Virus record (IMG/VR): IMGVR_UViG_3300042261_002385
Coordinates: 372,001-436,000 of that record
Strand: one strand, 5' to 3'
DNA: 64,000 nucleotides
A program made the position numbers and the translations under genes. Positions 9,421 through 62,567 of this stretch are shown piece by piece (the first letter of the stretch is position 1; each line of letters begins with the position of its first letter). The notes below the pieces were generated by a model. The model made no database searches and was not told the origin of the DNA. It worked only from the letters and a program-made list of their open reading frames with translations.

Positions 9421-10398
9421 ATGGCAAATGATCCAAAAACAATTATAGAAGAATGGGGAGTTGATCCACTTGAAGGAGTTCAATTAAATGAAGTTCAACA
9501 AACAATAGTTGATGAGGCATTAGGAAATGCCACTTCATTCAGAAATGATAAAGTGGTAAGTGATGAACTTGAAAATAAATATTCTAGTTTATTCAGTCAA
9601 TGTGATAGTGTAATTAAATCATTGGATGAAACATCTCTTAAAAGACTTCTTAGAAATGTTTATATAAATGAAAATCCAAAGTGGCACCCTGAGAGAAACT
9701 CACTTGTTCATATTAAAATCGTTATGTCACGAGGAATTCAAACTGGAGATGATGACCTTATTCAAGCAGCACTTTATCACGACATTTCTAAATTTGATAC
9801 TGTTTCATTTAACAAACAGGGATGGCCAACATCACTTGGGCATGACAAAGCAGGAGCTGATGTTGCTATGTCAGATGGTGCAAATGAAGTAGTTGTTTAT
9901 GTTTGTGCTAAACATATGGTCATTAAGGGTTGGCAGGGAGCTTCAGAAGGTGGTGAATTAAATCCATCAACTAAGTTTAAGATATTTGCAGATGCTCCAG
10001 GAGCAGACAATAATGAAAAAGCAAAATCATTTTGGAAACTTTGTGTGTTTTCTAAAATGGATAATATGGGAAATGATTTCAACTATGAAAACTTAAGATG
10101 GGATAATCCAAACTATGATAATTGGGATGAAGAGTGTCCTTTAAGAGATCAATTTAAGAAAGCAGAACTAGTTGAGATTAAAGTGGAAAAACCAAAACCT
10201 CCTTTCTCTGCTCAAGAGATTATGGCATTTGGAGTTCAACCAGGTCCAATGATGGGTAAAGTTATTGGAGCTACTACTGGAAAAACTAGAGAAGAGGCTT
10301 TAGAAATTATTAAACAAATGACTGGTAATCCGAATTTGACTATGGAATCTAAAAGATGGATTAGGACATTTGAGAGTTTTAGAAATAAATTAAGATAG
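9421..10398 (+). CDS. HD-domain phosphohydrolase resembling the HD/tail region of CCA-adding enzymes
   Basis: WHPERNSLVH, AALYHDISK, GHDKAG, GVQPGPMMGKVI; C-terminal KRWIRTFESF. Confidence 0.7.
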   Translation: MANDPKTIIEEWGVDPLEGVQLNEVQQTIVDEALGNATSFRNDKVVSDELENKYSSLFSQCDSVIKSLDETSLKRLLRNVYINENPKWHPERNSLVHIKIVMSRGIQTGDDDLIQAALYHDISKFDTVSFNKQGWPTSLGHDKAGADVAMSDGANEVVVYVCAKHMVIKGWQGASEGGELNPSTKFKIFADAPGADNNEKAKSFWKLCVFSKMDNMGNDFNYENLRWDNPNYDNWDEECPLRDQFKKAELVEIKVEKPKPPFSAQEIMAFGVQPGPMMGKVIGATTGKTREEALEIIKQMTGNPNLTMESKRWIRTFESFRNKLR

Positions 10399-10695
10399 TA
10401 TTTCTTCTAATTTTAACTCTCTAATTTTTTGTAAGTCTAATTTCAATGTTTCAATTGATGAATACTTAAAATGTTTTCCACCGTCATAAGACCAACAATC
10501 TAAAGTTGATACAACTCTATTCCAGTCAAGTGGTTTAACTAAAACCACCTGTTGATTTTGATTATAAATAAGCTGAAAAGCATAAACACCTTCTTTTATA
10601 TAATTAAGTATTTCAGATGTTTTTTCATCGGAAAATCGTAAATTATACTTTACTTTATGGTAATTTAACTCAGCTTTTATATAAACTTCAATCAT
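10390..10695 (-). CDS. C-tagged hypothetical protein (IRELKLEEILS)
   Basis: ORF track; probable ATG at 10695. Confidence 0.65.
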   Translation of the reverse strand: MIEVYIKAELNYHKVKYNLRFSDEKTSEILNYIKEGVYAFQLIYNQNQQVVLVKPLDWNRVVSTLDCWSYDGGKHFKYSSIETLKLDLQKIRELKLEEILS

Positions 10696-10913
10696 AATCC
10701 TAAACACTTTAATTTATTATCTCTCGCTTTTGATTTAGTGGTAAATAATTCCTTTCTATAATTACCAGTGATATCTAAATCATTAACAATTGTATAATGT
10801 CCTGTAACAATTCTTAGATAAACATATTTCTTCCCTTTAGTTAGGACTTTAACTTTTTGACCATTATAAACATTTTGATATCGGTCTTTAATAGCAATTA
10901 CATAATCCTTCAT
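10692..10913 (-). CDS. C-tagged small beta-rich protein (ARDNKLKCLGL)
   Basis: LTKGKKYV motif. Confidence 0.65.
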   Translation of the reverse strand: MKDYVIAIKDRYQNVYNGQKVKVLTKGKKYVYLRIVTGHYTIVNDLDITGNYRKELFTTKSKARDNKLKCLGL

Positions 10914-10946
10914 ATTCCTATTTTATTTTTTCAATTGGCATTGGAG

Positions 10947-11192
10947 CTACAGAAATATCTCATCTAACATTTTTTGCCTCCAAACATCTAAAGTAACAAA
11001 GTTCTTTGTTGGAAACCAATCCATCTTACTAAATCCTTCTAAGTTTAAGTAATTTTTATCCCATTCTACAGCATCGAAAAAAACAAGACTTGCTTCATAT
11101 ACTTTACCATATTCTAATGGCTCTTCTAATTTTAGAATTGGATCTCCACTTAACTTATTTGTAAAGTTAGCATCTATACAAACTACTTTCAT
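10947..11192 (-). CDS. C-tagged small beta-rich protein (WRQKMLDEIFL)
   Basis: MKVVCID..LEYGKVYE pattern. Confidence 0.65.
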   Translation of the reverse strand: MKVVCIDANFTNKLSGDPILKLEEPLEYGKVYEASLVFFDAVEWDKNYLNLEGFSKMDWFPTKNFVTLDVWRQKMLDEIFL

Positions 11193-11710
11193 ATTCCTAA
11201 ATCATCTAATTTACTATCTCTTAAAAACTCTTTGATAAGTAAGTTCAATTCATATTTTCCATCAACACAATCTCTTTCTAGAATCTTAATTGGTCTAATT
11301 TCTATTGTGTGAGTTCTATCAATTCTTTTATCAGAACCCCAATCGGATAACTGTGAATTTTTATTTTTGGATAGAATATCAAAAGTCATAAGTCTAATTG
11401 ACCTCATCTTTTTTGATGTAACTATTTTTGTTTTAAAGTAATCCGATTTCTCAAAAGTAATCTCAACTATGAAGTGAAACTTATCAGTGACTTCTGATAA
11501 GTTTGATGGCATAGTTTTATAAAACTGAGGCTGTTCAATATGAGAATAAGTAATGACTCCGCCACTTTCTGAAACTGCGACATCATCAATTGTGAAAAAA
11601 TCATCACTGGTCATTTCGAAAAAATTCTTTTGCTCAGGAAGCCAACTTAAAAAGATTAGACTTTTAGTTTCCTTATTAAATGAGTTTGATATATTGTAGT
11701 CAATTTTCAT
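11189..11710 (-). CDS. C-tagged hypothetical protein (LRDSKLDDLGI)
   Basis: ORF track. Confidence 0.7.
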   Translation of the reverse strand: MKIDYNISNSFNKETKSLIFLSWLPEQKNFFEMTSDDFFTIDDVAVSESGGVITYSHIEQPQFYKTMPSNLSEVTDKFHFIVEITFEKSDYFKTKIVTSKKMRSIRLMTFDILSKNKNSQLSDWGSDKRIDRTHTIEIRPIKILERDCVDGKYELNLLIKEFLRDSKLDDLGI

Positions 11711-13809: not shown

Positions 13810-14535
13810 ATGAAAAGTGAAACAGAATTTAAGAAATTTGCACTAAGTGAGGGTTTATCATCAATGGACCTACACTATCACCAACAACAAATTGAGGCTT
13901 CTATGACACCTTATATTCTTGAAGAAAGAGAAATGAGGGTCACACAAATGGATGTATTCAGTAGATTACTAAGAGATAGAATTATTTGGATATCAGGAGT
14001 TGTAGATCAAAGAATGTGTGATGTCACTCAAGCACAGCTTATGTTTTTAGATTCAACAGAAAAGAAAGATATCACACTTCATATAAATTCACCAGGTGGT
14101 TCCGTTTTACATGGTTTAGGAATTATTGATGTTATGAACTATATCAACTCAGATATCCAAACAATCAATACAGGAATGGCAGCATCTATGGGTTCTGTTC
14201 TACTTTCATCTGGAACAAAAGGAAAACGATCATCACTTCTACATTCAAGAGTTATGACACACCAAGTCAGTCACGGAATGCAAGGAAATATTCAAGATAC
14301 AACTATTTCTCACATTGAAGGACACAAATACAACTATATCTTATTTAAGATTTTGGCTGACAACTGTGGAAAATCTTTTGAAGAAATGATTGAGTCTTCT
14401 CGTCGTGACAAATGGTTTAACTCACATGAAGCACTCCAGTTTGGATTGATTGATGAGGTTATCGGTGATAACTCTATGGATAAAATGTTAGTTGGATTTG
14501 ATGACTATTATAACAGAGAAGTTTTATCAAAATAA
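13810..14535 (+). CDS. clpP: ATP-dependent Clp protease proteolytic subunit
   Basis: MDVFSRLLRDRII, INSPGGSV, MAASMGS (Ser), MTHQ (His), RDKWF (Asp). Confidence 0.95.
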   Translation: MKSETEFKKFALSEGLSSMDLHYHQQQIEASMTPYILEEREMRVTQMDVFSRLLRDRIIWISGVVDQRMCDVTQAQLMFLDSTEKKDITLHINSPGGSVLHGLGIIDVMNYINSDIQTINTGMAASMGSVLLSSGTKGKRSSLLHSRVMTHQVSHGMQGNIQDTTISHIEGHKYNYILFKILADNCGKSFEEMIESSRRDKWFNSHEALQFGLIDEVIGDNSMDKMLVGFDDYYNREVLSK

Positions 14536-24822: not shown

Positions 24823-25020
24823 ATGGTTGTTATATGCAGAGATAATAAAGACTATGAAAGGTTCCTAAAAATTGGCGAGAAGTATTTCGTTATAGAAATT
24901 CTTTGTCAAGAAAACCAATTTTGGTATAGAATTGAAGGATTGAATACTATTTTCAGCTACTTTCGATTCTACCCAGTAGACCTTATTAGACAACAAAAGA
25001 TTGAAGATTTAGGTATCTAA
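24823..25020 (+). CDS. C-tagged small beta-rich protein (IRQQKIEDLGI)
   Basis: MVVIC..LKIGEKYFV pattern. Confidence 0.65.
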   Translation: MVVICRDNKDYERFLKIGEKYFVIEILCQENQFWYRIEGLNTIFSYFRFYPVDLIRQQKIEDLGI

Positions 25021-25036
25021 AATTAATATATAACCT

Positions 25037-25594
25037 ATGAGGTTATTAAATTTCGAGCTTTTTTGTGAAGCCTACAACAAACCAAGAGCTGGTGGTAAAC
25101 GTCGTTGGTCAGTCAAATATAAGAAGAAAATTGATTGTAGTAATCCAAAAGGATTTTCTCAAAAACAATATTGTAAAAGAAAACGTAGAGGTGGTCACTA
25201 TAAAACAGAATCAGTTGATAATGATTTTATAAAAAATACTCTTGGTCATATATTCTTAGAAGTATCTGATGTTAGTGATTGGTTTTTTTCGGTAGAAGGC
25301 GATATTTTTAGTAACTACTATGAAGTTTATATATCATTTGGTGATTCTGAACCATATCGAGGAGATGAAGGTGATGAATATCAACAAAGACAAATTTCTA
25401 AAGAATTAATAGATTGTATAAAAAGATCTATAGATTTTATGGACGGTGAAGATTTTTATTATAATTTACTTTTTTGTTCAGAATATTCATCCGACCCTGG
25501 TGAAGATTATATAGATACAATAGATATTGAAGATTTGAAACCAGGTCAATCAATGTTAGAAAATGAATCTATCAGAATAAAATTTTCTAAATAG
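25037..25594 (+). CDS. N-tagged protein with basic IDCSNPKGFSQKQYC module and acidic domain
   Basis: MRLLNFELFCE; AATATATA 25025. Confidence 0.7.
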   Translation: MRLLNFELFCEAYNKPRAGGKRRWSVKYKKKIDCSNPKGFSQKQYCKRKRRGGHYKTESVDNDFIKNTLGHIFLEVSDVSDWFFSVEGDIFSNYYEVYISFGDSEPYRGDEGDEYQQRQISKELIDCIKRSIDFMDGEDFYYNLLFCSEYSSDPGEDYIDTIDIEDLKPGQSMLENESIRIKFSK

Positions 25595-25631
25595 TTTAAT
25601 CTTTTTTTCCAATAGACATATAACTCTTACT

Positions 25632-25991
25632 ATGAGTTTATTCTATTTCTTTACAATTGTTTTTATTCTATGGGAGCTTAACACTCTCATTTTTACAAAG
25701 TCATATAACGATTTTTTAGAGTCAAGTATTCAAAGAATTCAAACACAGAAAGTCACTACAGATGATATTGTTTTTTCACTTTTTAACCTTTCTTATTTTA
25801 TTTGGACATCAATAGGAATATTTACCAATCAATATCTGTTTTTTTTACTACTTCTTATTTTAGGAGTTGTTAGTGCAACTGTTTCTAAAAAGATTAAAAA
25901 ATCTAATATAGACAGAATTCTATTACACAGGAGAATCGATGCTGTTATTTCAATCGTAATATTAGTTTTGATTTGGTTCAGTCGGTATTAA
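25632..25991 (+). CDS. Membrane protein
   Basis: Several hydrophobic segments. Confidence 0.65.
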   Translation: MSLFYFFTIVFILWELNTLIFTKSYNDFLESSIQRIQTQKVTTDDIVFSLFNLSYFIWTSIGIFTNQYLFFLLLLILGVVSATVSKKIKKSNIDRILLHRRIDAVISIVILVLIWFSRY

Positions 25992-26080
25992 ATCAAATCG
26001 ATGAAAAGATTAATCTTAAAAGTATTACTGTGGTGGAGCCTCAAATATAAAAAAAATAAAAGAAAGTCAATTTGGGATTT

Positions 26081-26395
26081 ATGATGTCAGAAAAAAATGA
26101 ATTAAATGTAGTTCAGAGTCACATTAATAAAATATACGAACTTTTTAAATCACAATCAAAACTAAATTATGTCACTCCATCTATACCAGGTCAACAAATT
26201 GTCGACTATCTTCAAATAGACAAGTCAGAGTATTACCACTTCTTTAATTTGATGTGCTATGAACTAAAAGTGCTTTCTATAAATCCAGGAACAGATGAAG
26301 TGTCTTATCATTGGCAGGAAAATGATTATGGATTACTAGAACCACTCAGAACTCAACTTGAAAGAGATATTAAAATTGATGAACTAGGTATATGA
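26081..26395 (+). CDS. C-tagged hypothetical protein (ERDIKIDELGI)
   Basis: ORF track; probable ATG at 26081. Confidence 0.65.
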   Translation: MMSEKNELNVVQSHINKIYELFKSQSKLNYVTPSIPGQQIVDYLQIDKSEYYHFFNLMCYELKVLSINPGTDEVSYHWQENDYGLLEPLRTQLERDIKIDELGI

Positions 26396-26616
26396 GAGTA
26401 GGTGATATTGTTAGATTAAAATCTGAACACTATTTAAATCAGTTCATTAAAGGAGACTGTTCTATAACACAAGTAGTTAAATATAATAATAAACATAGAA
26501 GGACTCGATATCATATTAAAAATAGTCAAGATTGCATGACTTGGGTATATTTAGAAGAAATAGATTTAATAAGTGATTTAAGAGACCAAAGACTATCAAT
26601 GATAGGTATCAAATAA
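26392..26616 (+). CDS. C-tagged SH3/KOW-like small protein (LRDQRLSMIGIK)
   Basis: MRVGDIVRLK start. Confidence 0.65.
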   Translation: MRVGDIVRLKSEHYLNQFIKGDCSITQVVKYNNKHRRTRYHIKNSQDCMTWVYLEEIDLISDLRDQRLSMIGIK

Positions 26617-32317: not shown

Positions 32318-32334
32318 TAGATTATATATTATAT

Positions 32335-33339: not shown

Positions 33340-33349
33340 AGATTATATA

Positions 33350-34075: not shown

Positions 34076-34164
34076 ACGTTATATATTATAATTTTTATAA
34101 AAACAAAGTTATAAACAAATCAATTTTTATATCGTATAACCGTGATATAAAATATTTACTTATT

Positions 34165-44907: not shown

Positions 44908-45171
44908 ATGATAGTATTCAATACAATAAAGAAAGCAGAACACTGGTTAAAGTGGTATTCTAAACATAACGATTATCATAGAGATGGTTATGATTGGGAA
45001 TCTGTTTCAACTTATATTGATGGAAATCTTGTTGTAACTCGTCACCAAGGTGATGGTTGTGGGTGTGGATGTGACGACCATCATTTTGATTTCATCACAG
45101 TTCATGGTAGAATTAAAAAATTCGATACTAAATCTATTCGTGGTGAAAAGATAAATGACTTAGGTGTATGA
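44908..45171 (+). CDS. C-tagged hypothetical protein (IRGEKINDLGV)
   Basis: GCGCGC motif. Confidence 0.65.
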   Translation: MIVFNTIKKAEHWLKWYSKHNDYHRDGYDWESVSTYIDGNLVVTRHQGDGCGCGCDDHHFDFITVHGRIKKFDTKSIRGEKINDLGV

Positions 45172-45371
45172 TAGTTAAATGTAAATCAGATAATGACTCT
45201 GTTGGTAAACTTAAAGGCTTGACTATTGATAAATCATATACAGTTACTGGTATTGATAAAATAGGGTATAGAATAGTTGATAATGAATTTAGAAACTATT
45301 GGTATACAAAAGAATTGTTTTATCCGATAGATGAAGAAAGAAATAAAAAATTAAATGCCTTAGGAATATGA
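45168..45371 (+). CDS. C-tagged small beta-rich protein (ERNKKLNALGI)
   Basis: MIVKC..LTIDKSYTV..YRIVD pattern. Confidence 0.65.
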   Translation: MIVKCKSDNDSVGKLKGLTIDKSYTVTGIDKIGYRIVDNEFRNYWYTKELFYPIDEERNKKLNALGI

Positions 45372-45701
45372 AAACCCCAGATGAAATTAGATTAGAAGAA
45401 ACTAAAAAGTGTAAAGGATACACTAATAGACAATTACGTTTTAATCTTATAATTTATAACTTCTTTAAATTTCTTTTTTCAAGAACATTTATGTTTATTT
45501 TCTATGCTACACTAATCGTAATAATGTCAATGTTTATGATGGTTCCAATCGAAATTAGAATCTTCTTTGGTCTTATATCACACTTTATTCTTTTTATGGT
45601 ATTTGATCCACTGATAAGTAAGTTTGTTGGTGTAGACTATACCAAAAAAGAAATCAATATCTTAATACAGGTCAATAAAGAGATTCTAAAACAAAGACTA
45701 A

Positions 45702-46181
45702 ATGAAAGAAGTTGAAATCCTTTTAGACATCATAAATAAACTTCCAGGAGTCGAAGTTACTGGTCATATCTTAGACAGATCTTTTGACCAAATTAAATCA
45801 AAATGGTCAGGGCCCCTTATCTTTTTACATATAGATGAAAGTGAACAAGAAGGTTTATTCTTCTTAACCAGAGTATTAGATAAGAGATATTTTCAACACG
45901 GACATCTTTGGAGAATCGAACTATCAGTTGGAGACCTTAATTATAACAATGGTGATAGACCAATCACCTATCAGATATTTAGACCACTAGTAGGAATCGA
46001 AACTGAAGAAACATTAGTCAGGGAATATAGTGACTTGATTGAAAACATGGTTTATCATTTCAATCACAGTGAGTTTATGGACTGTTATAGAATGTGTAGA
46101 GAAAAATATAGTAATAGTAGACTTCATTGGACTAACGAGGCTTGGTTAAGAAAAGATAAATTAAACAGATTAGGAATATAA
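45702..46181 (+). CDS. C-tagged hypothetical protein (LRKDKLNRLGI)
   Basis: ORF track. Confidence 0.65.
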   Translation: MKEVEILLDIINKLPGVEVTGHILDRSFDQIKSKWSGPLIFLHIDESEQEGLFFLTRVLDKRYFQHGHLWRIELSVGDLNYNNGDRPITYQIFRPLVGIETEETLVREYSDLIENMVYHFNHSEFMDCYRMCREKYSNSRLHWTNEAWLRKDKLNRLGI

Positions 46182-46205
46182 ACAAAAATTAAATAATTTA
46201 GGAGT

Positions 46206-46553
46206 ATGAATAATTTTTTAGATGATACCGATATTTTTATAAAGGATAACTTAGACTGGATATTAGCTGGTAACTATGATGATAAGTTTAATAAAGAACA
46301 GTTAGATAAGATGATTGAACTAAGTTTTCTTTATAATCATATGATATTAGAAAACGATAAACTTACTTTTGAGTATAGTAAGTATCAAATAAATCTAACT
46401 AATCTTTATGAACAATATAGTGAGTTGGTTTATCAATTAGGTAGAGAAGGAGTAAAGAATATGATTATCACTACAATCACTTCACAGGACCAATTTAAGT
46501 TAGCTTTTAAATCATTCTTAAGAGATAGAAAGATTAATAAAATTATCGAATAA
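46206..46553 (+). CDS. C-tagged hypothetical protein (LRDRKINKIIE)
   Basis: ORF track. Confidence 0.65.
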   Translation: MNNFLDDTDIFIKDNLDWILAGNYDDKFNKEQLDKMIELSFLYNHMILENDKLTFEYSKYQINLTNLYEQYSELVYQLGREGVKNMIITTITSQDQFKLAFKSFLRDRKINKIIE

Positions 46554-46559
46554 TCGAAT

Positions 46560-46701
46560 ATGAGAAGAAGACATCCAGAAATTAAAGGGTATAAAAGGGT
46601 ATATTCTTATTTTAGATTATTCCGGTAATCGAAGACCACTCGGAACATTTGAACCGTAAGACGTGATAAGAGATAAGAAGTTAAAGAAACTTGGAATATA
46701 A
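46560..46701 (+). pseudogene. Decayed gene remnant ending in an intact C-tag (IRDKKLKKLGI-stop)
   Basis: Tag codons 46666-46701 are preceded by an in-frame TAA and an aaagggtat duplication. Confidence 0.5.
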
Positions 46702-46723
46702 ATGAAAAGATATCTATAGAAAT

Positions 46724-47041
46724 ATGAAATGTTATAAGCTAGTCGATAACACACCAGTTAAATGTGAATTAGATGAGATAGATATGAAGGATAAAACTCT
46801 TTGGTATGATGATTTCTCAGGAGTTCAAGTTTCTACTGTATTCTTAGTTTGGGACCATTCATTCGGAAATGGAGCACAACCAGTTCTTTTTGAAACAATG
46901 GTGTTTGGTGGCGTCTATAATGACTATCAAATCAGATATAATACTTATGAAGAAGCCGAAGCAGGTCATAAAGAAACGTGTTATATGGTTAATAAAATAT
47001 CTGATGATAGACAAAAAAAATTAGATGATTTAGGTATCTAA
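46724..47041 (+). CDS. C-tagged phage protein (DRQKKLDDLGI)
   Basis: VSTVFL..PVLFETMVFGG..RYNTYEEAEAGH phage hypothetical motif. Confidence 0.7.
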   Translation: MKCYKLVDNTPVKCELDEIDMKDKTLWYDDFSGVQVSTVFLVWDHSFGNGAQPVLFETMVFGGVYNDYQIRYNTYEEAEAGHKETCYMVNKISDDRQKKLDDLGI

Positions 47042-47208: not shown

Positions 47209-47796
47209 ATGAAAATAGTAAACAATAGAATAGACTTCTTAAACGAAGTTAAGACACTCATACCAGACAACCCAACGTGTATTGAAATAGGAGTAGAAAA
47301 AGGAGATTTTAGTAAACTACTTATACAATATCTGACACCTAAAAAACTATTCTTAGTAGATCCGTGGCAAACCGGTCACGATAAAAACTCAGAACCTAAT
47401 TATGGAACAGTGTTAAATAGTTTACCAACCGCTTACTCTACAGAACAAGATTACGCTTCTATCTTAACTCATTTCTATAAAGATATAAAATCAAATAAGG
47501 TTATTGTAAGACCGGACTTCTCATATAATGTAGTAGATGATTTTCCTGACAACTATTTTGACTTTATCTATATTGACTCCTGTCACCTTTATGATTCTGT
47601 TAAGGCAGATTTAAATGATTTTCTACCTAAATTAAAAGTAGACGGTATAATGGCCGGTCATGACTATTTTAACTATGATAACTTTGGCGTAATCAAAGCA
47701 GTAGACGAGTTCTGTATTGAACACGGTTTTGAAAAAATAGTAATGGCTCAACCATCTTGGGATTGGGCACTTAGAAAAACAAATCTTAATTTCTAA
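47209..47796 (+). CDS. Class I SAM methyltransferase (Methyltransf_24-like)
   Basis: IEIGVEKGDFS, LVDPW, FDFIYIDSCHLY, GIMAGHDY. Confidence 0.85.
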   Translation: MKIVNNRIDFLNEVKTLIPDNPTCIEIGVEKGDFSKLLIQYLTPKKLFLVDPWQTGHDKNSEPNYGTVLNSLPTAYSTEQDYASILTHFYKDIKSNKVIVRPDFSYNVVDDFPDNYFDFIYIDSCHLYDSVKADLNDFLPKLKVDGIMAGHDYFNYDNFGVIKAVDEFCIEHGFEKIVMAQPSWDWALRKTNLNF

Positions 47797-48234: not shown

Positions 48235-48603
48235 ATGATAGAAAAACTATGGAATGATATTAGACTTATCTATGACGGTTATAATTTTAAGAGTAATTCA
48301 TTAGTAGATGATCTAATGATTGTCTCACAAGATAACTATTACATAGTAAATTTCAGCCGTTCGGATAGCCTGTCTAAAAAAAGAATCACTACTCAAATAA
48401 GAATCGAAAAGAACTATAATTTAGTTAATATGTGGTCTATAGGTAAACAATTCGATGATAGATACCACAATAAAACAGATTATAAACTCACGGTTCAAAC
48501 AAATAATAAAATAGAAGTAGATGAAAACCACAAAATTGAATTAGCATATAAAATAATCACACCATTCCTAAGAGAAGTTAAACTTGCTAAGATTATAAAC
48601 TAA
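48235..48603 (+). CDS. C-tagged hypothetical protein (LREVKLAKIIN)
   Basis: ORF track. Confidence 0.65.
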   Translation: MIEKLWNDIRLIYDGYNFKSNSLVDDLMIVSQDNYYIVNFSRSDSLSKKRITTQIRIEKNYNLVNMWSIGKQFDDRYHNKTDYKLTVQTNNKIEVDENHKIELAYKIITPFLREVKLAKIIN

Positions 48604-48607
48604 AGAT

Positions 48608-48892
48608 ATGGATTTAGAACAAATGATACAAAGATGTCCTGACATCACTAAACTTACTCAATCTTTGCTTAATGAAGTGGCTATAAAAAAAACCGGTCAA
48701 GAACTGAATTTCAATCTAACATTCATTGAGAACGGATATGATGATTTAGATGTAATTGAATTAGTAATGGAAATCGAAAAGATATTAGATATCACTATAC
48801 CCGATGATGTGGTAGATGTAATTATAAAAGGAAAACCACCACGTTTCACCGAGTGGATTCGAAATGAAAAGATTAGACAACTTGGCTTATGA
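48608..48892 (+). CDS. Acyl-carrier-protein-like protein lacking the phosphopantetheine Ser, C-tagged (IRNEKIRQLGL)
   Basis: GYDDLDVIELVMEIEKILDITIPDD vs canonical GADSLDTVELVMALEEEF..IPD. Confidence 0.7.
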   Translation: MDLEQMIQRCPDITKLTQSLLNEVAIKKTGQELNFNLTFIENGYDDLDVIELVMEIEKILDITIPDDVVDVIIKGKPPRFTEWIRNEKIRQLGL

Positions 48893-49292
48893 TAAAAAAA
48901 GTCAGTGATACACTCTTTGGTATATGGGGTCTTTGCTTATTTGCAATAAAATGGGTATTAGGATTTATATGGTGCCAAACTACCGGTCATAAATTCACTA
49001 CTATACACTATTCTAAAAAAAGTGGTGAATCACTCGAAATATGTGAACGTTGTTTAAAAACAAGAATAAATTATTGATATTGTAAATAATTTTAACTATA
49101 TTTGTAATTATTAACTATCAAATCAAAACCACTATGAAAGGAGACCTAAACGAAATTGCTATCAAATCTATTATACAAGGAGTTATTGCAAACGCTATCA
49201 TAGTTATTAGCGTCACTCTATACCAACTGATTTTCTAATACAAAAATCTGTTCATTTTTCTGTATATTAGAAAATAATCCTTATCTTTGTGT

Positions 49293-50879: not shown

Positions 50880-51092
50880 ATGAATTGGATTTGTCGTTTA
50901 TTTAGGCATAAGTTTCGTTATCAAGAAAAAAGAGTTCCTTTACAGATTGGGTCTATTACTAAAAAGTTTAGAAAGTGTCAGAGATGTGGTCTTACTCAGA
51001 AGTATTTAAATGATACTGGCCAGTGGATTGAATTAAGAAAGACATTATCTGAGATACGGGATGAAAAGCTATCTAAATTAGGAATCAAATAA
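50880..51092 (+). CDS. C-tagged DUF1660-like Zn-finger protein (IRDEKLSKLGIK)
   Basis: ICRLFRHKF..CQRCG. Confidence 0.65.
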   Translation: MNWICRLFRHKFRYQEKRVPLQIGSITKKFRKCQRCGLTQKYLNDTGQWIELRKTLSEIRDEKLSKLGIK

Positions 51093-53809: not shown

Positions 53810-56260
53810 TTATCTTAATAATCTCACGCTACCCTGAAGTTCTCTTTTATCATCGTTTTTTGGAAGACCAAACTCGATAGTCCAGTTATAGATTCCATCA
53901 GGACAGATTTTATTATTATAAGTTCCATCCCATTTACCAGTAACATCAAAAGATTCCCATACCATTTCTCCCCATCTATTATACATAGTCATATGAAACT
54001 GATAGATATCAACTCCTGAAGTAATAATTGGAGAAAAGTATTGATTGTGTTCGTCTCCGTCTGGAGTAAATGAATTTGGAATATAAATTAATTCTTGTGG
54101 ACAAAGTTGAATAGTAACTGTTATATTTTGTGGATAAGATTGGCAGCCTAATTCCCAGCGAGTTGCTTGAAATAAAAACACACCTTCTTGATTCCAAGTT
54201 AAGTTAATTTGGTCTCCGATTAAGGTATCTCCAAAAGTTGACCATTCTGTATAACCTGGTTGTGAAAAAAGTGATACATAGGTATCAGTAATTGAGTCTC
54301 CTTCACATAGTTCGTGATACTCAGAATTAGTGATTTGACCATCAATTTGTATTGAGAATTGTGGACGTGGATTTACTTCAATTTGAGATGTTTGTGTAAA
54401 TTGACACCCTGATTGAATATAAGTATACGTTATGGTGTTTAGACCTGCTAATTGTGTTGTTGGACAGAACTGAGAATTTTGAACACCAACTCCTGAGAAT
54501 TGACCACCTACTGGTTGTGCAGATAATTGGACACAGTTATCATAGTCACAAAGTGGAAGAACTGGTGTGATTTGTGGAACGATATCTAAATCTACAATAG
54601 TAAATGTTTGTGGAGGTGAAAGACATCCAGTTACATCTTCTCCTATAACAGTTAAGGCATTTGGGTAAACACCACCAGCGACTCCTGTCACATCGAGTAA
54701 GATGTTTTGGGTTCCTTGACCAGAGATTGTTCCGATTGTTGAGGTCCAGTTATAGGTTAAGTTATTAAAAAGACTTGATGTTTGATAAGGGTTATTTGAA
54801 GAGTTAACACAAACTGTATCACTTCCTATTATTGGGTTTATTATAACTTGTGGTGGATCTGTTAAGGTAACGGTTCCAGTTGCTTGGCATCCATTAGCAT
54901 CGGTTACTACAACACTAAAGTTTCCTTGGCAAAGACCAGTTGCAGTTTGTCCAGTTTGATTATCAGACCAAAGATAAGTGTAGGGTGCAATACCTGCTAC
55001 TGGATTTACCACGGCTTGTCCATCACAGTAACTGTAGCAAAGTGGATTAGTTCCTGTAACTGGTGGTTGTGGAAGTGCTGCTGGTTCAACAATAGTGGCC
55101 AATCCTTGATAGCTACAACCAGATGCGTCCTGGAGTGTGAAGTTATAGTTTCCAGCACAAAGACCATTTTGTGTTAGTGAGTTTCCGACTAAACCAGGCC
55201 AACTTATAGTTATTGGAGCAGTTCCACCTATTGGAGTTACAATTATCTGACAAGTGCAATCACCATTACAAAGTGGATTCGTTATTTGAACTCCTGGAGG
55301 TGGTAGATTCGGGGTTGGAGTCACTAAAATAGTGTCTGGTCCTAAGTTTCCAGCTCCAGCATTACATTGAGACCAGCCTAGATTACAAGTTGGATAAACA
55401 AATTGACAAGTGTATTGAGTTGGTCCATTTGGAGTTACCGTGATTTGAGGTCCGGTTCCGATTGGAATTGGATTTCCAACTTGAAACCAAGTTAATGTAG
55501 GTGTCACTTGTGGACCTGATGGTGTCCATCTGTAAGCGTTGTTCTGAGTTGTCCACTGAGTTGAGTTTCTACCTGGAACAGTCACGGCTGCGGATCCTAA
55601 AAGGTTATGAACACCTTGAACTGCGGTTCCGCCAGCCCATTGTGGACAGTTTGGTTTATTTTGAATATGATTTTCGATTACGTTTGTAGATTCGTAAATT
55701 ACAATATGGAAAGTTCCTAATAGGTTAGTGCAAGAAAACATAGGAACGTTTATCCAACTAACAATTAATCTACGACATGGAGCTACGCCTTGAACTTGAT
55801 AACGGACTAAACCTCCGATACCTGGATTCCAGTCTTGCCACGGTCCCATAATACAATTCTTAGGTGTTAAGGCGTTTCCTGTTGGAATTGGATTTGATGT
55901 AAAAGTTGTTGGTTGACCAGCGCTAAATGAAATCCAACCGTTTGAACCTATCCAGAATTGTGTATACGTGTTTCCATAGTAACAGAAAGTAAAACCAATG
56001 TTAAATGGTCCAGATTGAGAGTCATCTCCTAAAGCAACAGTAGTTCCGGCATTGGGTTGACCGACAAATGGTATGTTAGTAACGGTATAGTTTGTGGTTT
56101 GATTTGGATTAGAACCAGGTCCACACTGAGAAAGGTCAGCTGTTAAAGTAGTTTGTGTTACTCCACAAGGTAGAGTTACATCTGGTCCTAAATAAGGACA
56201 ATATTGACCAAATGTGAATTGGGCAAAGATAAGGCTTAAAAAAATTATTAGGTTTCTCAT
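53810..56260 (-). CDS. SprB-repeat surface protein with T9SS type-B (gliding-motility-associated) C-terminal domain
   Basis: Signal peptide; PLC..GGTAP..GLCAG..DANGC repeats; YIPNSFTPDGD..YNRWGEMV..WDGTY..DGIY..GSVRLLR. Confidence 0.88.
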   Translation of the reverse strand: MRNLIIFLSLIFAQFTFGQYCPYLGPDVTLPCGVTQTTLTADLSQCGPGSNPNQTTNYTVTNIPFVGQPNAGTTVALGDDSQSGPFNIGFTFCYYGNTYTQFWIGSNGWISFSAGQPTTFTSNPIPTGNALTPKNCIMGPWQDWNPGIGGLVRYQVQGVAPCRRLIVSWINVPMFSCTNLLGTFHIVIYESTNVIENHIQNKPNCPQWAGGTAVQGVHNLLGSAAVTVPGRNSTQWTTQNNAYRWTPSGPQVTPTLTWFQVGNPIPIGTGPQITVTPNGPTQYTCQFVYPTCNLGWSQCNAGAGNLGPDTILVTPTPNLPPPGVQITNPLCNGDCTCQIIVTPIGGTAPITISWPGLVGNSLTQNGLCAGNYNFTLQDASGCSYQGLATIVEPAALPQPPVTGTNPLCYSYCDGQAVVNPVAGIAPYTYLWSDNQTGQTATGLCQGNFSVVVTDANGCQATGTVTLTDPPQVIINPIIGSDTVCVNSSNNPYQTSSLFNNLTYNWTSTIGTISGQGTQNILLDVTGVAGGVYPNALTVIGEDVTGCLSPPQTFTIVDLDIVPQITPVLPLCDYDNCVQLSAQPVGGQFSGVGVQNSQFCPTTQLAGLNTITYTYIQSGCQFTQTSQIEVNPRPQFSIQIDGQITNSEYHELCEGDSITDTYVSLFSQPGYTEWSTFGDTLIGDQINLTWNQEGVFLFQATRWELGCQSYPQNITVTIQLCPQELIYIPNSFTPDGDEHNQYFSPIITSGVDIYQFHMTMYNRWGEMVWESFDVTGKWDGTYNNKICPDGIYNWTIEFGLPKNDDKRELQGSVRLLR

Positions 56261-59256: not shown

Positions 59257-60906
59257 TTAAATTTTAGTTACGAGATTTTCTACAATTTGGAGACCTCTTA
59301 TTATTTTTGAATAATAATCATTTACTCTCCAATTTCTCAAATATTGACAAGCTCTTTCACCAGTATCTTGACCTAAATAATCTATGAAATTTGATAAATT
59401 ATCTAAACCGTAAGTGCTATTAGAAAAGAAGTTTGATAGACTTATCATTTTTTGACGAGCTATTTCTAAATCTTCTATGGTATTAAATTCACCAGACATT
59501 AGTCTTGTATAGAACTTTTGACTTATTCTTTCTAAACTTTCAACAATTGGTAAATATTTGTTTTCAGTTTCTTCACTGTCGGATTTTAGAATTTTTTTAA
59601 CAGTTTCTAAATTTTTAGTGATTCTAGTAGTTCTTTCAGCTGCTCTTTTGTAAAGGTCTTTGATTCTATTATTAATTTGATTAATGCAGTATTCTTTATT
59701 ACTTTCGTCTTCAGTAGACATCATATCATAATAAAGTTCTGATATTGATCCAAAATAGTTTTGATATCTTGAAGCTGATTCTAAGACAAACATTGACCAT
59801 CTACCACCAACTCCTCTAGATACTAAATTTTTGATATTAGACACATCGCCTATGATGTCAGCTTTAAGTGCAATTTGAGTAAGATATCTTTCAATATTTT
59901 GTTTTCTAACATCATCATCACTAACTACTAATCTGCTGCCAGATTTAAGTTCTTCTCTTTCATCTTTTATTTCACTTCTACGTTGATACTCACCCGACTT
60001 TAATTTATTTAAGTCTAACACTAAGGCAAAATGAGCATCTTTTATAGTAGATTCTACATTTGTTCCAGTATATGATTTAAAGTATTGGTTTAGTCCAACA
60101 TTCCACTCGTAAGGATCTACGGCATCTTTATCATCATCATCATCACCTTCTTCTTTTTCTTTAAGAACACAAATTCTGTTAAAATCTCCACCAGATACAT
60201 TCCAAGAGTATCTTCCATAACTTCTCCAAGCACTACCATTTGGTGATCCACCGTCGAACCTGTCTTGAATACAGAATACTTCTCCACCACTTTGAAAAAT
60301 CGTTGCAATTACATCTGGATCTCTATCATGTGCTGCAATTGTAACTTTTGTCAAGTGTGGTAGACTACGGAGAGTTCTTACTCCATTTGAATCAGGTAAC
60401 AGGGTAGATACTACTTTATATTTTTGCAAAGATTTTGATTTAGATGCTACGCTTCTAAGAACTCCATCAACTCCAGTTTGTGTGATGAATTTACCATCTG
60501 ATGAAAACCAGAATTTAATTATTTTTACCTCTGGTTGTTGTGGTTCTTTTCCAGATCCATCACAATGGGGACAATCAACGATTCTAGTTCTTTGACCCCA
60601 CATACGTGCTAATTTACCTGATTTACAAACCTCACCTTCAACACCGTGTTGTCTGAATGCGGTTTTAGAAGTCATTTTACAAGGTTCATCTTTAGGTTCA
60701 AATTTAACATTTAGTGCCTTTTTGAAAGGTAAGTATTCAAACATATCATCTGAAAACTGAGATAGTGGAAAATCGTAACTGCGAGCTAATTTTTCGAGTG
60801 TATTAATGAATCTTTGTTTAGATTCAGAATTTATATATCCTAAAATTTTAGTTAATTTAACTGATTCAAATGCTTCGAAAAGTTTGAGATATTTTAATTG
60901 TCTCAT
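59257..60906 (-). CDS. Large N-tagged hypothetical protein (MRQLKYLKLFEAFE)
   Basis: Zn-ribbon-like CPHCDGSG; helical C-half. Confidence 0.75.
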   Translation of the reverse strand: MRQLKYLKLFEAFESVKLTKILGYINSESKQRFINTLEKLARSYDFPLSQFSDDMFEYLPFKKALNVKFEPKDEPCKMTSKTAFRQHGVEGEVCKSGKLARMWGQRTRIVDCPHCDGSGKEPQQPEVKIIKFWFSSDGKFITQTGVDGVLRSVASKSKSLQKYKVVSTLLPDSNGVRTLRSLPHLTKVTIAAHDRDPDVIATIFQSGGEVFCIQDRFDGGSPNGSAWRSYGRYSWNVSGGDFNRICVLKEKEEGDDDDDKDAVDPYEWNVGLNQYFKSYTGTNVESTIKDAHFALVLDLNKLKSGEYQRRSEIKDEREELKSGSRLVVSDDDVRKQNIERYLTQIALKADIIGDVSNIKNLVSRGVGGRWSMFVLESASRYQNYFGSISELYYDMMSTEDESNKEYCINQINNRIKDLYKRAAERTTRITKNLETVKKILKSDSEETENKYLPIVESLERISQKFYTRLMSGEFNTIEDLEIARQKMISLSNFFSNSTYGLDNLSNFIDYLGQDTGERACQYLRNWRVNDYYSKIIRGLQIVENLVTKI

Positions 60907-62567
60907 ATTTGTGGACCTACGATTTCTACTTTTATTCCGCTTCTTCTTAGTTCGGATACATATTCTTTAGTTTGCTTGTCAACTATAAGGTCACCAGAAA
61001 TTACTAATTTTTTTACTTTTAAGTTACTGAAACCTTCTTTCATATCAGCTAATGTATCTAATGTATAAAGTATTTGTAATTCTTCCAATTCAGTGAATAT
61101 AGAAAGATCAATATCTCCTGTCATATCACAACTTAATATCTGAAGTTTCTTAATATTTGGATTTACTGAAACAATTTCTTCGAATATCTTAGAGTCAAAT
61201 TTACATTTATCAAATGCGATAGAGTCTGTTTTTACGTTGCTAAATCCTGACAATGTTTTTATTTTCAATGATTTGAATTTAATCCATTCTAAGTCAAGTG
61301 GAATTTGAGTCAAATTCTCTGGAATATCTGTAGTCTCAATTACTAGTTGTTTGATTTTTGCTTTTGGTGATATTTTTATCTTACTCCAGTCATAAACTGC
61401 ACTTAAGTAAAGTGATTTAGTATTTTTTCCAATAAACTGAGCTTGGTCAAGTCTCATTCTATCCATATAAGGAGCTCTAATTGAATCTTCAGGATCAATA
61501 TCCGGTGTGAATAAATATCTAGAAGAACTTGGGCTTGTGTTTTCAACGTTGCTTGAATATTTTGTTACAAGCTCGTCAAATATATCTTTCATCCTATCTG
61601 GATAAGCTCTGTCAAAGTAAATCTTTGCTTCACTTTGGTCATCAAATGATTCGATATTTCTAATCATCATTCTTGAAAGTGGTAGTTTATCTGATATTTT
61701 TTCATCATTCCAGAAAATCGGAGTATCAAATACAAAGAAAGCTGGAATTGAATTCGGATCGAAAACGTTTCCTAATAGTTGTTCTCTGTAGCCACCTGTG
61801 TATAAATGTTGACAAGAACTATAGAATTTTGAAATAGACATGTTCAAAATATCACTCGGATTGTGGTCAATCTGAAGATATATATCTCTTCCAAAGATTG
61901 CATATTCATATCTGTAGTCACTGTTGTGATTTTCTTTAGCTAAATTTCTTAATTGACTAATATCTCTTGATGAGAAAATAGTTGTAGAGACTCTATCATC
62001 TGGATAACATCTATTGTAGTCATCAACAAAGCTATTGATATTAATTAAGTTCGTTGAGAAAACAGGATCACCTGCATTCTTTTTAACACGAATCATATTT
62101 CCTTCTTCATCTCTAATTGGTCTACCATTCTCATCTTTTTGAATTCTTTCTGAAGCTTGAGTTTCTCTAATTTCTAATTTTCTAAATACCGGCTCATAGA
62201 TAAAAACTATTTGATCTACAGTTGGTGCTTGGATATTAAAATTATCCATAACCATTTTACTAGCATCGGTTAGAAGCTCTAAATTTATAGACTCTTGAAG
62301 AACATGATTGAATTTATCTGGAATACTTGTAAATGAATTCATAATATTTTCCATATTACAATCAAAAAAATAAGATAAAACTTTAAGTTTATCTTCTTCT
62401 TCAAGTTTCCATCTACCTTGTTTAATCTTATCGGTCGGATCTACTTCTTCATAATCTAAGTATTTCTCACCCCATTGTTGAGCAACAGCTTTTGCTTGTT
62501 TTGGTAAGATAATATCTTTGATTCTGGCTTCGTTTAACCATTGTTCTCTAGTTTTAATCCACTTCAT
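60903..62567 (-). CDS. Large N-tagged protein with LRR-like C-terminus (MKWIKTREQWLNE)
   Basis: IKQLVI, IKKLQI, LEELQI, VKKLVI repeats; AATATATA (-) 62572. Confidence 0.72.
   Translation of the reverse strand: MKWIKTREQWLNEARIKDIILPKQAKAVAQQWGEKYLDYEEVDPTDKIKQGRWKLEEEDKLKVLSYFFDCNMENIMNSFTSIPDKFNHVLQESINLELLTDASKMVMDNFNIQAPTVDQIVFIYEPVFRKLEIRETQASERIQKDENGRPIRDEEGNMIRVKKNAGDPVFSTNLININSFVDDYNRCYPDDRVSTTIFSSRDISQLRNLAKENHNSDYRYEYAIFGRDIYLQIDHNPSDILNMSISKFYSSCQHLYTGGYREQLLGNVFDPNSIPAFFVFDTPIFWNDEKISDKLPLSRMMIRNIESFDDQSEAKIYFDRAYPDRMKDIFDELVTKYSSNVENTSPSSSRYLFTPDIDPEDSIRAPYMDRMRLDQAQFIGKNTKSLYLSAVYDWSKIKISPKAKIKQLVIETTDIPENLTQIPLDLEWIKFKSLKIKTLSGFSNVKTDSIAFDKCKFDSKIFEEIVSVNPNIKKLQILSCDMTGDIDLSIFTELEELQILYTLDTLADMKEGFSNLKVKKLVISGDLIVDKQTKEYVSELRRSGIKVEIVGPQI

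What the first reader, a model, noticed from the sequence alone, without database searches (positions are those of the whole stretch)
48608..48892. ACP mimic: phosphopantetheine Ser replaced by Asp, plus C-tag
Seen: GYDDLDVIELVMEIEK..ITIPDD aligns to the ACP signature GxDSLDxVELVM, with DSL changed to DDL, so it cannot be pantetheinylated; helix II is retained; it ends in IRNEKIRQLGL. Established: ACP helix II is the docking surface for AcpS and Fab enzymes, and ACP binds SpoT and MukB in E. coli. Inference: a decoy that sequesters ACP partners or ACP-dependent defence proteins, or routes them to whatever reads the C-tag.
Basis: partly seen in the sequence, partly recalled or inferred. Interest (0 to 1): 0.72.

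Follow-up and report, generated by a model that had tools for sequence, protein, structure and literature searches.

The report
Serine-less ACP look-alike with shared tail
A huge freshwater phage of Bacteroidota encodes a small protein that copies the bacterial acyl carrier protein but can never carry its cofactor, and it ends in a short tail that dozens of unrelated small proteins of the same phage group also carry.

Summary
ORF 48608-48892 (+, 94 aa) is an ACP-fold protein. Asp46 sits where ACP has its phosphopantetheine serine, recognition helix II is intact, and the protein ends in ...IRNEKIRQLGL. It is not a private mutation. About 67 cluster representatives of this roughly 95-aa family lack the serine: 58 have Asp or Glu, 9 another residue. 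None of the 58 members with the tail has Ser, and natural variants of this gene are synonymous or conservative.

The window is the last 64 kb of a 436-kb Mahaphage-like huge phage, with a likely Bacteroidota host in freshwater. The phage encodes no PPTase, ketosynthase or PlsC-type acyltransferase. A complex model docks the protein on AcpS through helices II and III (score 0.65, best control 0.05).

The tail was the surprise. The motif R-x-x-K-[LI]-x-x-[LI]-[G/L]-x lies at the C-terminus of 28 of 552 gene-like ORFs in this genome (0.3 expected), 20 of them in this window. It appears on unrelated folds, including all-alpha ACP and an SH3-like barrel. Related huge phages carry 3-34 copies each, and cellular genomes carry none beyond chance.

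Best reading: a non-acylatable decoy of host ACP that carries a clade-wide addressing or degron helix. The decoy function and the tail's reader are inferred, not shown.

The parts
48608..48892 (+). Gene for the 94-aa serine-less ACP-fold protein (stop included)
   Evidence: ORF list. Pfam PP-binding 21.8 bits. AF2 model pLDDT 85.8. All top Foldseek and VIA hits are ACPs, with model residues 17-84 aligned to AcpP 3-75.
48608..48655 (+). Family-specific N-terminal extension (residues 1-16, two short helices) ahead of ACP helix I
   Evidence: Model helices 3-9 and 11-15 lie outside the range aligned to ACPs. The consensus M....I....P.L.KIT is conserved in the family.
48734..48787 (+). Recognition helix II region (residues 43-60: G-Y-D-D-L-D-V-I-E-L-V-M-E-I-E-K-I-L)
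   Evidence: Of 48 aligned members, D45 is kept in 44, L47 in 44, D48 in 43, E51 in 45, M54 in 41 and E57 in all 48. These residues make up most of the predicted AcpS interface.
48743..48745 (+). Codon GAT for Asp46, on the column of the phosphopantetheine serine (E. coli Ser36)
   Evidence: PDB alignments. The family column reads D 33, E 25, S 10 and other 9; every Ser belongs to a tail-less true ACP or to P0072.
48845..48889 (+). C-terminal helix F80-L94. The first turns stand in for ACP helix IV, and R85-L94 (48860-48889) is the shared tail R-N-E-K-I-R-Q-L-G-L
   Evidence: Model helix 80-91. The ACP alignments end at about model residue 84-91. R85 is invariant in 48 of 48 members. The tail is not in the predicted AcpS interface.
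44908..47041 (+). Run of small genes, five of which end in the tail: 44908-45171, 45168-45371, 45702-46181, 46206-46553 (KII flavour) and 46724-47041
   Evidence: 45168-45371 models as an SH3-like barrel followed by a C-terminal helix.
48235..48603 (+). Upstream neighbour (122 aa) that ends in the second tail flavour, ...FLREVKLAKIIN
50880..51092 (+). Zinc-ribbon-like 70-aa protein (DUF1660 / phrog_2670 on residues 1-43) that ends ...IRDEKLSKLGIK
10390..11710 (-). Three tail-bearing ORFs: 10390-10707, 10692-10913 and 11189-11710
24823..26616 (+). Three tail-bearing ORFs (24823-25020, 26072-26395 and 26392-26616), with untagged genes between them
13810..14535 (+). Phage-encoded ClpP, one of three in the genome. 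It is a candidate part of a tail reader but is not shown to be linked to the tail
   Evidence: Pfam CLP_protease E 4.8e-55. NCBIfam ClpP 231 bits against 68 bits for the ClpP-related head maturation protease. In L109 a 95%-identical ClpP gene lies directly upstream of an ACP-like gene.

Best explanation
The gene encodes a member of a virus-specific family of roughly 95-aa acidic proteins (median pI 4.4). These proteins keep the four-helix ACP fold and the ACP recognition helix II, but Asp or Glu has permanently replaced the phosphopantetheine serine. The protein therefore cannot carry acyl groups. The most likely function is to occupy the ACP-docking site of one or more host (Bacteroidota) ACP-client enzymes, such as AcpS, fatty-acid, lipid A or phospholipid enzymes. 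It would then act as a dead-end competitor during host takeover, much as unmodified apo-ACP inhibits E. coli growth. The conserved carboxylate may imitate the phosphodiester of holo-ACP or add charge to the docking face.

The last 10-15 residues continue helix IV into a capped amphipathic helix, R-x-x-K-[LI]-x-x-[LI]-G-[ILV]-COOH. The same helix ends about 5% of this phage's genes, on unrelated folds. I read it as a clade-wide address or degron peptide read by one shared partner, which is not identified.

Shown: the fold, the serine loss and its conservation, the retention of helix II, the absence of phage ACP enzymes, and the tail's positional enrichment, modularity and restriction to viruses. 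Inferred: binding to host enzymes in vivo, inhibition, and any function of the tail.
For: Fold: AF2 pLDDT 85.8; every top Foldseek and VIA hit is an ACP, TM by target 0.64-0.72, Z up to 7.3. Serine loss is a family trait: position 46 is D or E in 40 of 48 aligned members and never Ser. Among 77 hits, none of the 58 tail-bearing members has Ser, while the DSL hits are tail-less true ACPs. Helix II and III acidic residues are the best-conserved columns, and the family is as acidic as real ACP. Natural variants are 6 synonymous changes plus L92I (my own codon count). The phage has no PPTase, ketosynthase or PlsC-type acyltransferase, and the gene has no conserved neighbours, so any partner is probably host-encoded. 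The complex model with the B. subtilis AcpS trimer scores 0.65 against a best control of 0.05; that mark was reached by 58 of 80 solved complexes and 2 of 110 mismatched pairs. The interface is helix II/III against AcpS helix 1 and residues 54-75. [quoted passage not shown] Tail: 28 of 552 ORFs carry it at the C-terminus against 0.3 expected. It is conserved at the amino-acid level with synonymous codon variation. In IMG/VR loci, 225 tail ORFs fall into 145 sequence clusters. It sits on an SH3-like fold as well. Related huge phages carry 3-34 copies each against 0-1 for a reversed-pattern control. In 596 Gb of cellular genomes it appears only at chance level.
Against: No experiment backs any of this. 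The AcpS dock used a non-host enzyme from a family with a solved ACP complex (1F80), so the score may only reflect likeness. A carboxylate beside the AcpS catalytic Glu could hinder binding rather than help it. Nine family members have a neutral residue (A, Q, N, G, Y, I, V) at the site, so a negative charge is preferred but not required. Which host enzyme is the target is unknown. No RNA evidence for expression was found. Nothing identifies a reader of the tail. Phage ClpP is absent from three near-complete tail-bearing genomes.
Confidence: 0.45

Rival explanations
1. Adaptor model. The ACP-like domain grips a host ACP-client enzyme, and the shared tail hands the complex to a common effector, for example the phage's own ClpC-like/ClpP protease. 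The host enzyme is then destroyed rather than merely blocked. Each tail-bearing small protein would aim the same effector at a different host target.
For: The tail lies outside the predicted client interface and is free. It sits at the extreme C-terminus in 204 of 225 cases, which is typical of peptides read through a free carboxylate. It occurs on more than 100 unrelated small proteins. The genome encodes three ClpP proteins and a 710-aa ClpC-like unfoldase that lacks the N-domain but keeps a VGF loop. One ClpP lies in this window, and in L109 a ClpP gene sits directly upstream of an ACP-like gene.
Against: The link between the tail and Clp is purely circumstantial. Near-complete relatives G002, G006 and G007 have 3, 9 and 6 tails but no ClpP. 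The tail does not resemble LAA-type degrons. No adaptor of this kind is known in phages.
Confidence: 0.12
2. The tail is a self-degron or timing device. It makes the small, presumably early proteins short-lived, through host or phage AAA+ proteases, so that host-takeover functions, including the ACP decoy, act only briefly. This is compatible with the decoy model for the ACP domain.
For: The tail occupies the extreme C-terminus and ends in nonpolar residues, as SsrA-type tags do. Tail genes cluster in arrays of small, same-strand, translationally coupled genes. The phage has its own Clp system.
Against: The tail is a well-formed capped helix with conserved R, K and G, not an unstructured nonpolar tag. 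The ClpP correlation is weak: 12, 22, 34, 7 and 13 tails in genomes with ClpP against 3, 9 and 6 without, with n = 8 and related genomes. That these genes are expressed early is assumed, not shown.
Confidence: 0.2
3. The protein is not an ACP decoy. The ACP fold has been reused as a generic small acidic scaffold, for example a DNA mimic or anti-restriction protein, or as a non-carrier structural subunit of a phage complex. The tail would then serve oligomerisation or membrane or compartment targeting.
For: Small, very acidic proteins are common phage DNA mimics (my own knowledge); this family has pI 4.4 and net charge about -9. The tail is an amphipathic helix that loosely resembles MinD-type membrane helices (my own comparison). 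Tail pLDDT is lower (59-82), which fits a helix that needs a partner.
Against: The columns conserved are exactly the ACP-client contact residues: D35, L37, D38, E41, M44, E47 and D56 in E. coli numbering. A generic acidic surface would not demand that. The tail carries acidic residues at positions +1 and +6, which is unusual for membrane-binding helices.
Confidence: 0.15
4. The gene is a decaying remnant of a phage auxiliary ACP gene, or a real carrier that uses another attachment residue.
For: Phage ACPs exist as auxiliary genes (PHROG 5934 and 4154). One weak hit, P0072, keeps DSL together with a tail-like ending, so a transition from true ACPs is plausible.
Against: The family is conserved over 30-55% identity, with invariant E57 and R85. 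Natural variants are synonymous or conservative. No Ser, Thr or Cys lies in or beside the motif. The phage has no PPTase.
Confidence: 0.04

Closest known systems
Bacterial acyl carrier protein AcpP (Pfam PF00550; E. coli 1ACP/1L0H, B. subtilis 1F80)
   Same: Four-helix fold. Acidic helix II with D-x-L-D-x-[VI]-E-L-V-M-x-[IL]-E. The I-P-D turn before helix III. pI about 4.4. Predicted canonical docking onto AcpS.
   Different: Asp or Glu replaces the phosphopantetheine serine. A 16-residue N-terminal extension is added. Helix IV is lengthened by the shared tail. Scores of 26-31 bits fall far below the AcpP equivalog cutoffs of 66-106 bits. No cognate enzymes are encoded in the genome.
Unmodified apo-ACP as a growth inhibitor in E. 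coli (reviewed in PMC3896788)
   Same: An ACP without its prosthetic group that still binds client enzymes and blocks them. Apo-ACP inhibits glycerol-3-phosphate acyltransferase more strongly than holo-ACP.
   Different: That case is an overexpression artefact of the cell's own ACP. Here the apo state is fixed genetically, conserved across a virus family, carries an acidic replacement residue, and is combined with a tail.
Phage-encoded ACPs annotated as auxiliary metabolic genes (PHROG 5934, 4154; ACP modules in Flavobacterium jumbophages, PMC13573597)
   Same: Small ACP-fold proteins encoded by large phages. phrog_5934 matches residues 2-71 at E 2.3e-7.
   Different: Those are treated as real carriers. 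The true-ACP hits in my search keep DSL and have no tail. tblastn at E 1e-3 finds no member of this family in 50,697 GenBank phage records.
C-terminal addressing peptides: SsrA-type degrons read by ClpX/ClpA, encapsulin cargo-loading peptides, dockerin or PRANC-type shared C-terminal modules (analogies from my own knowledge)
   Same: A short motif at the extreme C-terminus, shared by otherwise unrelated proteins of one system.
   Different: The sequence R-x-x-K-[LI]-x-x-[LI]-G-[ILV] matches none of them. It is a capped amphipathic helix, it is virus-only, and no reader is known. I found no paper describing it.

Membership tests
Acyl carrier protein (PP-binding, PF00550 / AcpP) | Four-helix ACP fold | tested here: met
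   AF2 model pLDDT 85.8. All top Foldseek and VIA hits are ACPs, covering AcpP residues 3-75.
Acyl carrier protein (PP-binding, PF00550 / AcpP) | Sequence score above the curated family thresholds | tested here: inconclusive
   Pfam gives 21.8 bits against a cutoff of 20.8, a bare pass. NCBIfam AcpP equivalogs give 26-31 bits against cutoffs of 66-106, a clear fail.
Acyl carrier protein (PP-binding, PF00550 / AcpP) | Conserved serine of the D-S-L motif that receives 4'-phosphopantetheine | tested here: not met
   Asp46 in this protein. The column is D or E in 58 of 77 family hits and is never Ser in a tail-bearing member.
Acyl carrier protein (PP-binding, PF00550 / AcpP) | Acidic recognition helix II that docks client enzymes | tested here: met
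   D45, D48, E51, E57 and D66 are kept in 90-100% of members. The modelled AcpS interface uses residues 43-58 and 66-74.
Acyl carrier protein (PP-binding, PF00550 / AcpP) | Works with a PPTase and acyl-ACP enzymes in the same genome or operon | tested here: not met
   The 436-kb phage record has no ACPS, ketoacyl-synthase or PlsC-type acyltransferase. The gene has no conserved neighbours.
Phage auxiliary ACP (PHROG 5934) | Match to the PHROG profile | tested here: met
   E 2.3e-7 on residues 2-71. Whether members of that PHROG keep the serine could not be read with these tools.
SsrA-like C-terminal degron for Clp proteases | Motif at the extreme C-terminus that ends in nonpolar residues | tested here: met
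   204 of 225 tail ORFs end exactly at G-[ILV]. In this genome 12 of 14 strict-motif occurrences lie within 2 residues of the C-terminus.
SsrA-like C-terminal degron for Clp proteases | Protease-dependent turnover conferred by the tag | not testable with these tools
   The only evidence is circumstantial: the phage ClpP and ClpC-like genes. Three near-complete genomes have tails but no ClpP.

The most novel reading that the evidence does not exclude
The tail R-x-x-K-[LI]-x-x-[LI]-G-[ILV]-COOH is an undescribed, virus-only addressing system of Mahaphage-like huge phages. One reader, possibly the phage's own N-domain-less ClpC/ClpP machine, would recognise dozens of unrelated small effector proteins by this C-terminal helix. 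The serine-less ACP would then be one cartridge of that system.
Probability: 0.12. Interest if true: 0.9.

Novelty: new variant of a known kind. Interest (0 to 1): 0.72.

Why it matters
Acyl carrier protein is one of the busiest hubs in a bacterial cell. A conserved viral copy that can dock but never carry would be a natural protein inhibitor of fatty-acid, lipid A or phospholipid synthesis. It would be a new kind of host-takeover tool, and a template for probing ACP-client surfaces.

The larger point is the tail. About 5% of this phage's genes, and tens of genes in each related huge phage, end in the same ten residues on unrelated folds. That implies a common reader and a sorting, assembly or turnover logic that has not been described for phages. 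It also gives a simple sequence handle for picking a coherent class of likely host-interaction proteins out of the mass of 'hypothetical' genes in the largest known phage genomes.

Tried and rejected
1. The tail as a DNA or RNA element (promoter, terminator or recombination site). Rejected because codons vary synonymously while the residues stay the same.

2. The tail as mimicry of a host signal. The pattern scan of 596 Gb of prokaryote genomes gave 44 stretches, close to my back-of-envelope chance estimate of about 50. Most are not ORF ends. The only clusters are two small contigs that look like mis-binned phage.

3. Co-variation of the tail flavour within lineages, as proof of a co-evolving reader. 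It looked promising in L106 and L013. It was dropped because the LGI and KIL flavours co-occur in this genome and in L003, L009, L017 and L050.

4. Phage ClpP as an obligate partner of the tail. Tail counts are 12, 22, 34, 7 and 13 in genomes with ClpP and 3, 9 and 6 without. This is too weak and is confounded by relatedness.

5. A conserved operon around the ACP-like gene, including the methyltransferase at 47209-47796. Neighbours differ between relatives.

6. The paired roughly 550-aa proteins (59257-62567) as TPR-type readers. Only a sub-threshold ANAPC5 hit was found, with nothing in PHROGs or PDB. This was left open.

7. A second PP-binding hit at genome position 32333. The frame is not open, so it is noise.

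8. P0028, a 666-aa apparent fusion. It has no domains and a low-complexity body, so it is uninformative.

9. Searches that found nothing: tblastn against GenBank phages, PADLOC, and literature searches for the tail or for serine-less phage ACPs.

10. Bacteroidota AcpS Swiss-Prot references were not held. The Flavobacterium PPTase I fetched belongs to a secondary-metabolite cluster. B. subtilis AcpS was used instead.

11. RNA run X20 showed no coverage of the gene. This is no evidence either way.

Full report
**What is at the coordinates.** The ATG lies 5 nt after the stop of the upstream gene, and the TGA overlaps the ATG of the next gene. Pfam PP-binding matches at 21.8 bits against a cutoff of 20.8. 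A phmmer search of the PDB returns ACPs at the top, with E about 1e-4. In those alignments ...N-G-Y-D-D-L-D-V-I-E-L-V-M... pairs with ...L-G-A-D-S-L-D-x-V-E-L-V-M..., which puts Asp46 on the serine column. NCBIfam AcpP equivalog models give only 26-31 bits against cutoffs of 66-106. The protein is therefore ACP-like but not an AcpP.

**Fold.** An AlphaFold2 model built on 48 family members has mean pLDDT 85.8. Its helices are at 3-9, 11-15, 18-29, 46-60, 66-74 and 80-91. All 50 Foldseek hits shown against the PDB are ACPs, with probability up to 1.00 and TM by target mostly 0.64-0.72. The VIA second look aligns model residues 17-84 with AcpP residues 3-75, at Z up to 7.3. These Z values are modest, as expected for a 94-residue helical protein; what carries weight is that almost every hit is a carrier protein. 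Residues 1-16 are an added N-terminal piece. The helix at 80-91 takes the place of ACP helix IV and runs about two turns further. The 'C-tag' is thus continuous with the fold, not a loose appendage.

**The serine loss is a family trait.** An exhaustive profile-free search of 1.84 billion cluster representatives found 80 proteins at E below 1e-3, and 19 below 1e-10. In an alignment of 48 full-length members, position 46 is D in 21, E in 19, and Q, N, G, Y or another residue in the rest. It is never Ser.

Across the 77 hits of at most 130 aa the split is clean. The 58 with the tail have no serine, and 49 of them have D or E. The 10 with D-S-L are the weakest hits and have no tail. The one exception is P0072, which keeps DSL and ends in a tail-like RNKKLDLLLKNK, so it may be an intermediate.

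The most conserved columns are D45, L47, D48, E51, M54, E57 (invariant), D66 and R85 (invariant). In E. coli numbering the first seven are D35, L37, D38, E41, M44, E47 and D56, the residues that ACP clients contact (my own knowledge of ACP complexes). The family is as acidic as real ACP, with median pI 4.4 and net charge about -9.

Sequencing error is excluded. A 98%-identical variant with 38 member sequences keeps D-D-L-D. The stretch is present in many independent lake, river, estuary and lagoon metagenomes. The seven differences listed inside the gene in laid contigs are six synonymous changes plus L92I, which stays within the motif (my own codon count). Not all differences were printed. 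No transcription evidence was obtained.

**Genomic setting.** The window is bases 372,001-436,000 of a 436,265-bp IMG/VR virus record, with 31% GC and a CheckV completeness of 95%. A conserved 554-aa protein of the window is 61%, 43% and 32% identical to proteins of LR745206, LR756502 and LR756504. Those are the 634-642-kb genomes that Al-Shayeb et al. place in the Mahaphage clade and predict to replicate in Bacteroidetes (PMC7162821). A window protein with SprB, PKD and a CHU_C type IX secretion domain points the same way.

The phage record has no 4'-phosphopantetheinyl transferase, ketoacyl synthase or PlsC-type acyltransferase. Relatives share many genes with the window but in shuffled order, and the neighbours of the ACP-like gene are not conserved. 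The gene stands alone among small genes, and any ACP-type partner is most likely a host protein.

**Docking test.** A complex prediction was run with the B. subtilis AcpS trimer, because Bacteroidota references were not held. It scored 0.65 against a best control of 0.05. That mark was reached by 58 of 80 solved complexes and 2 of 110 mismatched pairs. The interface on the phage protein is residues 43, 45-47, 50-51, 54 and 58 in helix II, and 66-74 in helix III. It faces AcpS residues 10-28 and 54-75. This is the canonical ACP pose. Because a like complex is solved, the pass shows that the docking surface is retained, not that binding occurs. The tail is not part of the interface.

**The tail is the bigger finding.** Eleven ORFs in the window end in R-x-x-K-[LI]-x-x-L-G-[ILV], two of them followed by one Lys. 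The codons differ (AGA, CGA, CGT or CGG; TTA, CTA or CTT; GGA, GGT or GGC) while the residues stay the same, so selection acts on the peptide.

With a slightly wider motif that also takes the second flavour (...K-[IL]-x-x-[IL]-[LI]-polar), 28 of 552 non-overlapping gene-like ORFs of the genome carry it within four residues of the C-terminus. The internal rate predicts 0.3. Twenty of the 28 lie in this window, including the gene directly upstream of the ACP-like gene.

A degenerate DNA pattern for the strict tail found 92 stretches in IMG/VR, many on contigs of 170-480 kb. Those loci hold 225 tail ORFs with a median length of 95 aa. They fall into 145 sequence clusters once the tail is removed, and 204 end exactly at G-[ILV].

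Counts per record with a looser pattern are 22, 3, 34, 30 and 13, against 0-1 for the reversed control. In 21 further records the counts are 1-14, against 0 for the control. The same strict pattern in 596 Gb of prokaryote genomes gave 44 stretches, close to my rough chance estimate. Most are not ORF ends. The only clusters are two small contigs that look like mis-binned phage.

The tail sits on unrelated folds. These include the all-alpha ACP fold, a zinc-ribbon-like DUF1660 protein, and a large paralogous family (MKVICI...LTxGKxY...). That family models as an SH3-like barrel followed by a C-terminal helix with lower confidence. Structurally the motif reads as an amphipathic helix closed by a Gly cap, with the last hydrophobic residue folding back. 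That is my own reading of the pattern L4-x-x-L7-G8-I9. I found no description of this motif in the literature.

**Who reads the tail?** This is unknown. The genome has its own Clp machinery: three ClpP genes, one of them in the window at 13810-14535, and a 710-aa two-ring ClpC-like unfoldase. The unfoldase lacks the usual N-domain but keeps a VGF ClpP-docking loop. In a marine relative (L109), a ClpP gene 95% identical to the window's lies directly upstream of an ACP-like gene. That makes a degron or adaptor reading attractive.

The support is thin, however. Among eight near-complete or complete genomes, those with ClpP have 12, 22, 34, 7 and 13 tails, and those without have 3, 9 and 6. The genomes are related, and tails clearly exist without phage ClpP. 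An early idea that the tail flavour co-varies within a lineage failed, because both flavours occur in the same genome.

**Most likely mechanism.** The ACP domain is a permanently cofactor-less look-alike of host ACP that competes for ACP-client enzymes. The precedent is E. coli, where overproduced ACP stops growth by inhibiting glycerol-3-phosphate acyltransferase and apo-ACP is the stronger inhibitor (PMC3896788). The same review reports that SpoT does not bind apo-ACP, which argues against that partner. The preference for Asp or Glu over any other non-serine residue suggests the carboxylate matters, either as a stand-in for the phosphodiester or as extra charge on the docking face. That point is inference. 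The tail most likely addresses this protein, and about 27 others in the genome, to one shared partner. Whether that means turnover, delivery of bound targets, assembly or localisation cannot be decided here.

**Verdict.** The ACP part is a new variant of a known kind. The tail may be something new in its own right.

Noticed in passing
window 13810-14535 (+); genome G000 326455-327138 (+), 81465-82031 (-), 32044-34176 (-): The phage encodes three ClpP paralogs, all apparently with the Ser-His-Asp triad. It also encodes a 710-aa ClpC/ClpA-like double-ring unfoldase that lacks the Clp_N domain but keeps a VGF loop, which makes a complete Clp protease of its own. The window copy scores far better as true ClpP than as a ClpP-related head maturation protease.
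   Followed up: partly
window 14932-16737 (+): A 601-aa MsbA-like ABC exporter (transmembrane plus ATPase domains; best NCBIfam match is lipid A export MsbA, below cutoff) lies directly downstream of ClpP in a phage genome.
   Followed up: no
window 53810-56260 (-): An 816-aa protein carries a SprB repeat, a PKD-like domain and a CHU_C type IX secretion C-terminal sorting domain. A phage protein that could be exported by the host T9SS points to a Bacteroidota host.
   Followed up: no
window 59257-60906 (-) and 60903-62567 (-); L106 3888-8887: Two adjacent roughly 550-aa genes have no match in Pfam, PHROGs or PDB, and the two window proteins show no BLAST similarity to each other. Each has a homolog in distant relatives: three tandem roughly 550-aa genes sit next to the ACP-like gene in L106, and the 554-aa one is 61% identical in LR745206.
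   Followed up: partly
window 45168-45371, 24823-25020; L145 31-2351; L075; L009 9300-10429: A large paralogous family of 65-77-aa proteins (MKVICI...LTxGKxY...) occurs in tandem, translationally coupled arrays, with ten in a row in the 4.2-kb locus L145. The proteins model as an SH3-like barrel plus the tail helix.
   Followed up: partly
window 48889-49077 (+) and 50880-51092 (+): Two small Cys/His zinc-ribbon-like proteins of the DUF1660 type flank the region. One has an N-terminal hydrophobic helix and no tail, and the other has the tail.
   Followed up: no
window 47209-47796 (+): A class I SAM-dependent methyltransferase (Methyltransf_24, E 8e-14) lies 0.8 kb upstream of the ACP-like gene. 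It is not conserved next to it in relatives.
   Followed up: partly
P0072 (94 aa, metagenomic homolog): This is the only hit that combines an intact D-S-L motif with a tail-like ending (RNKKLDLLLKNK). It may be an intermediate between real phage ACPs and the serine-less family.
   Followed up: no
tail-bearing genes genome-wide, e.g. window 45168-45371 / 45368-45715: Most tails end ...GGA/GGT ATA TGA, so the Ile codon and the stop contain the ATG of the next gene. The arrays are therefore tightly coupled in translation. This may constrain the last two codons but does not explain the conserved R, K and L residues upstream.
   Followed up: partly
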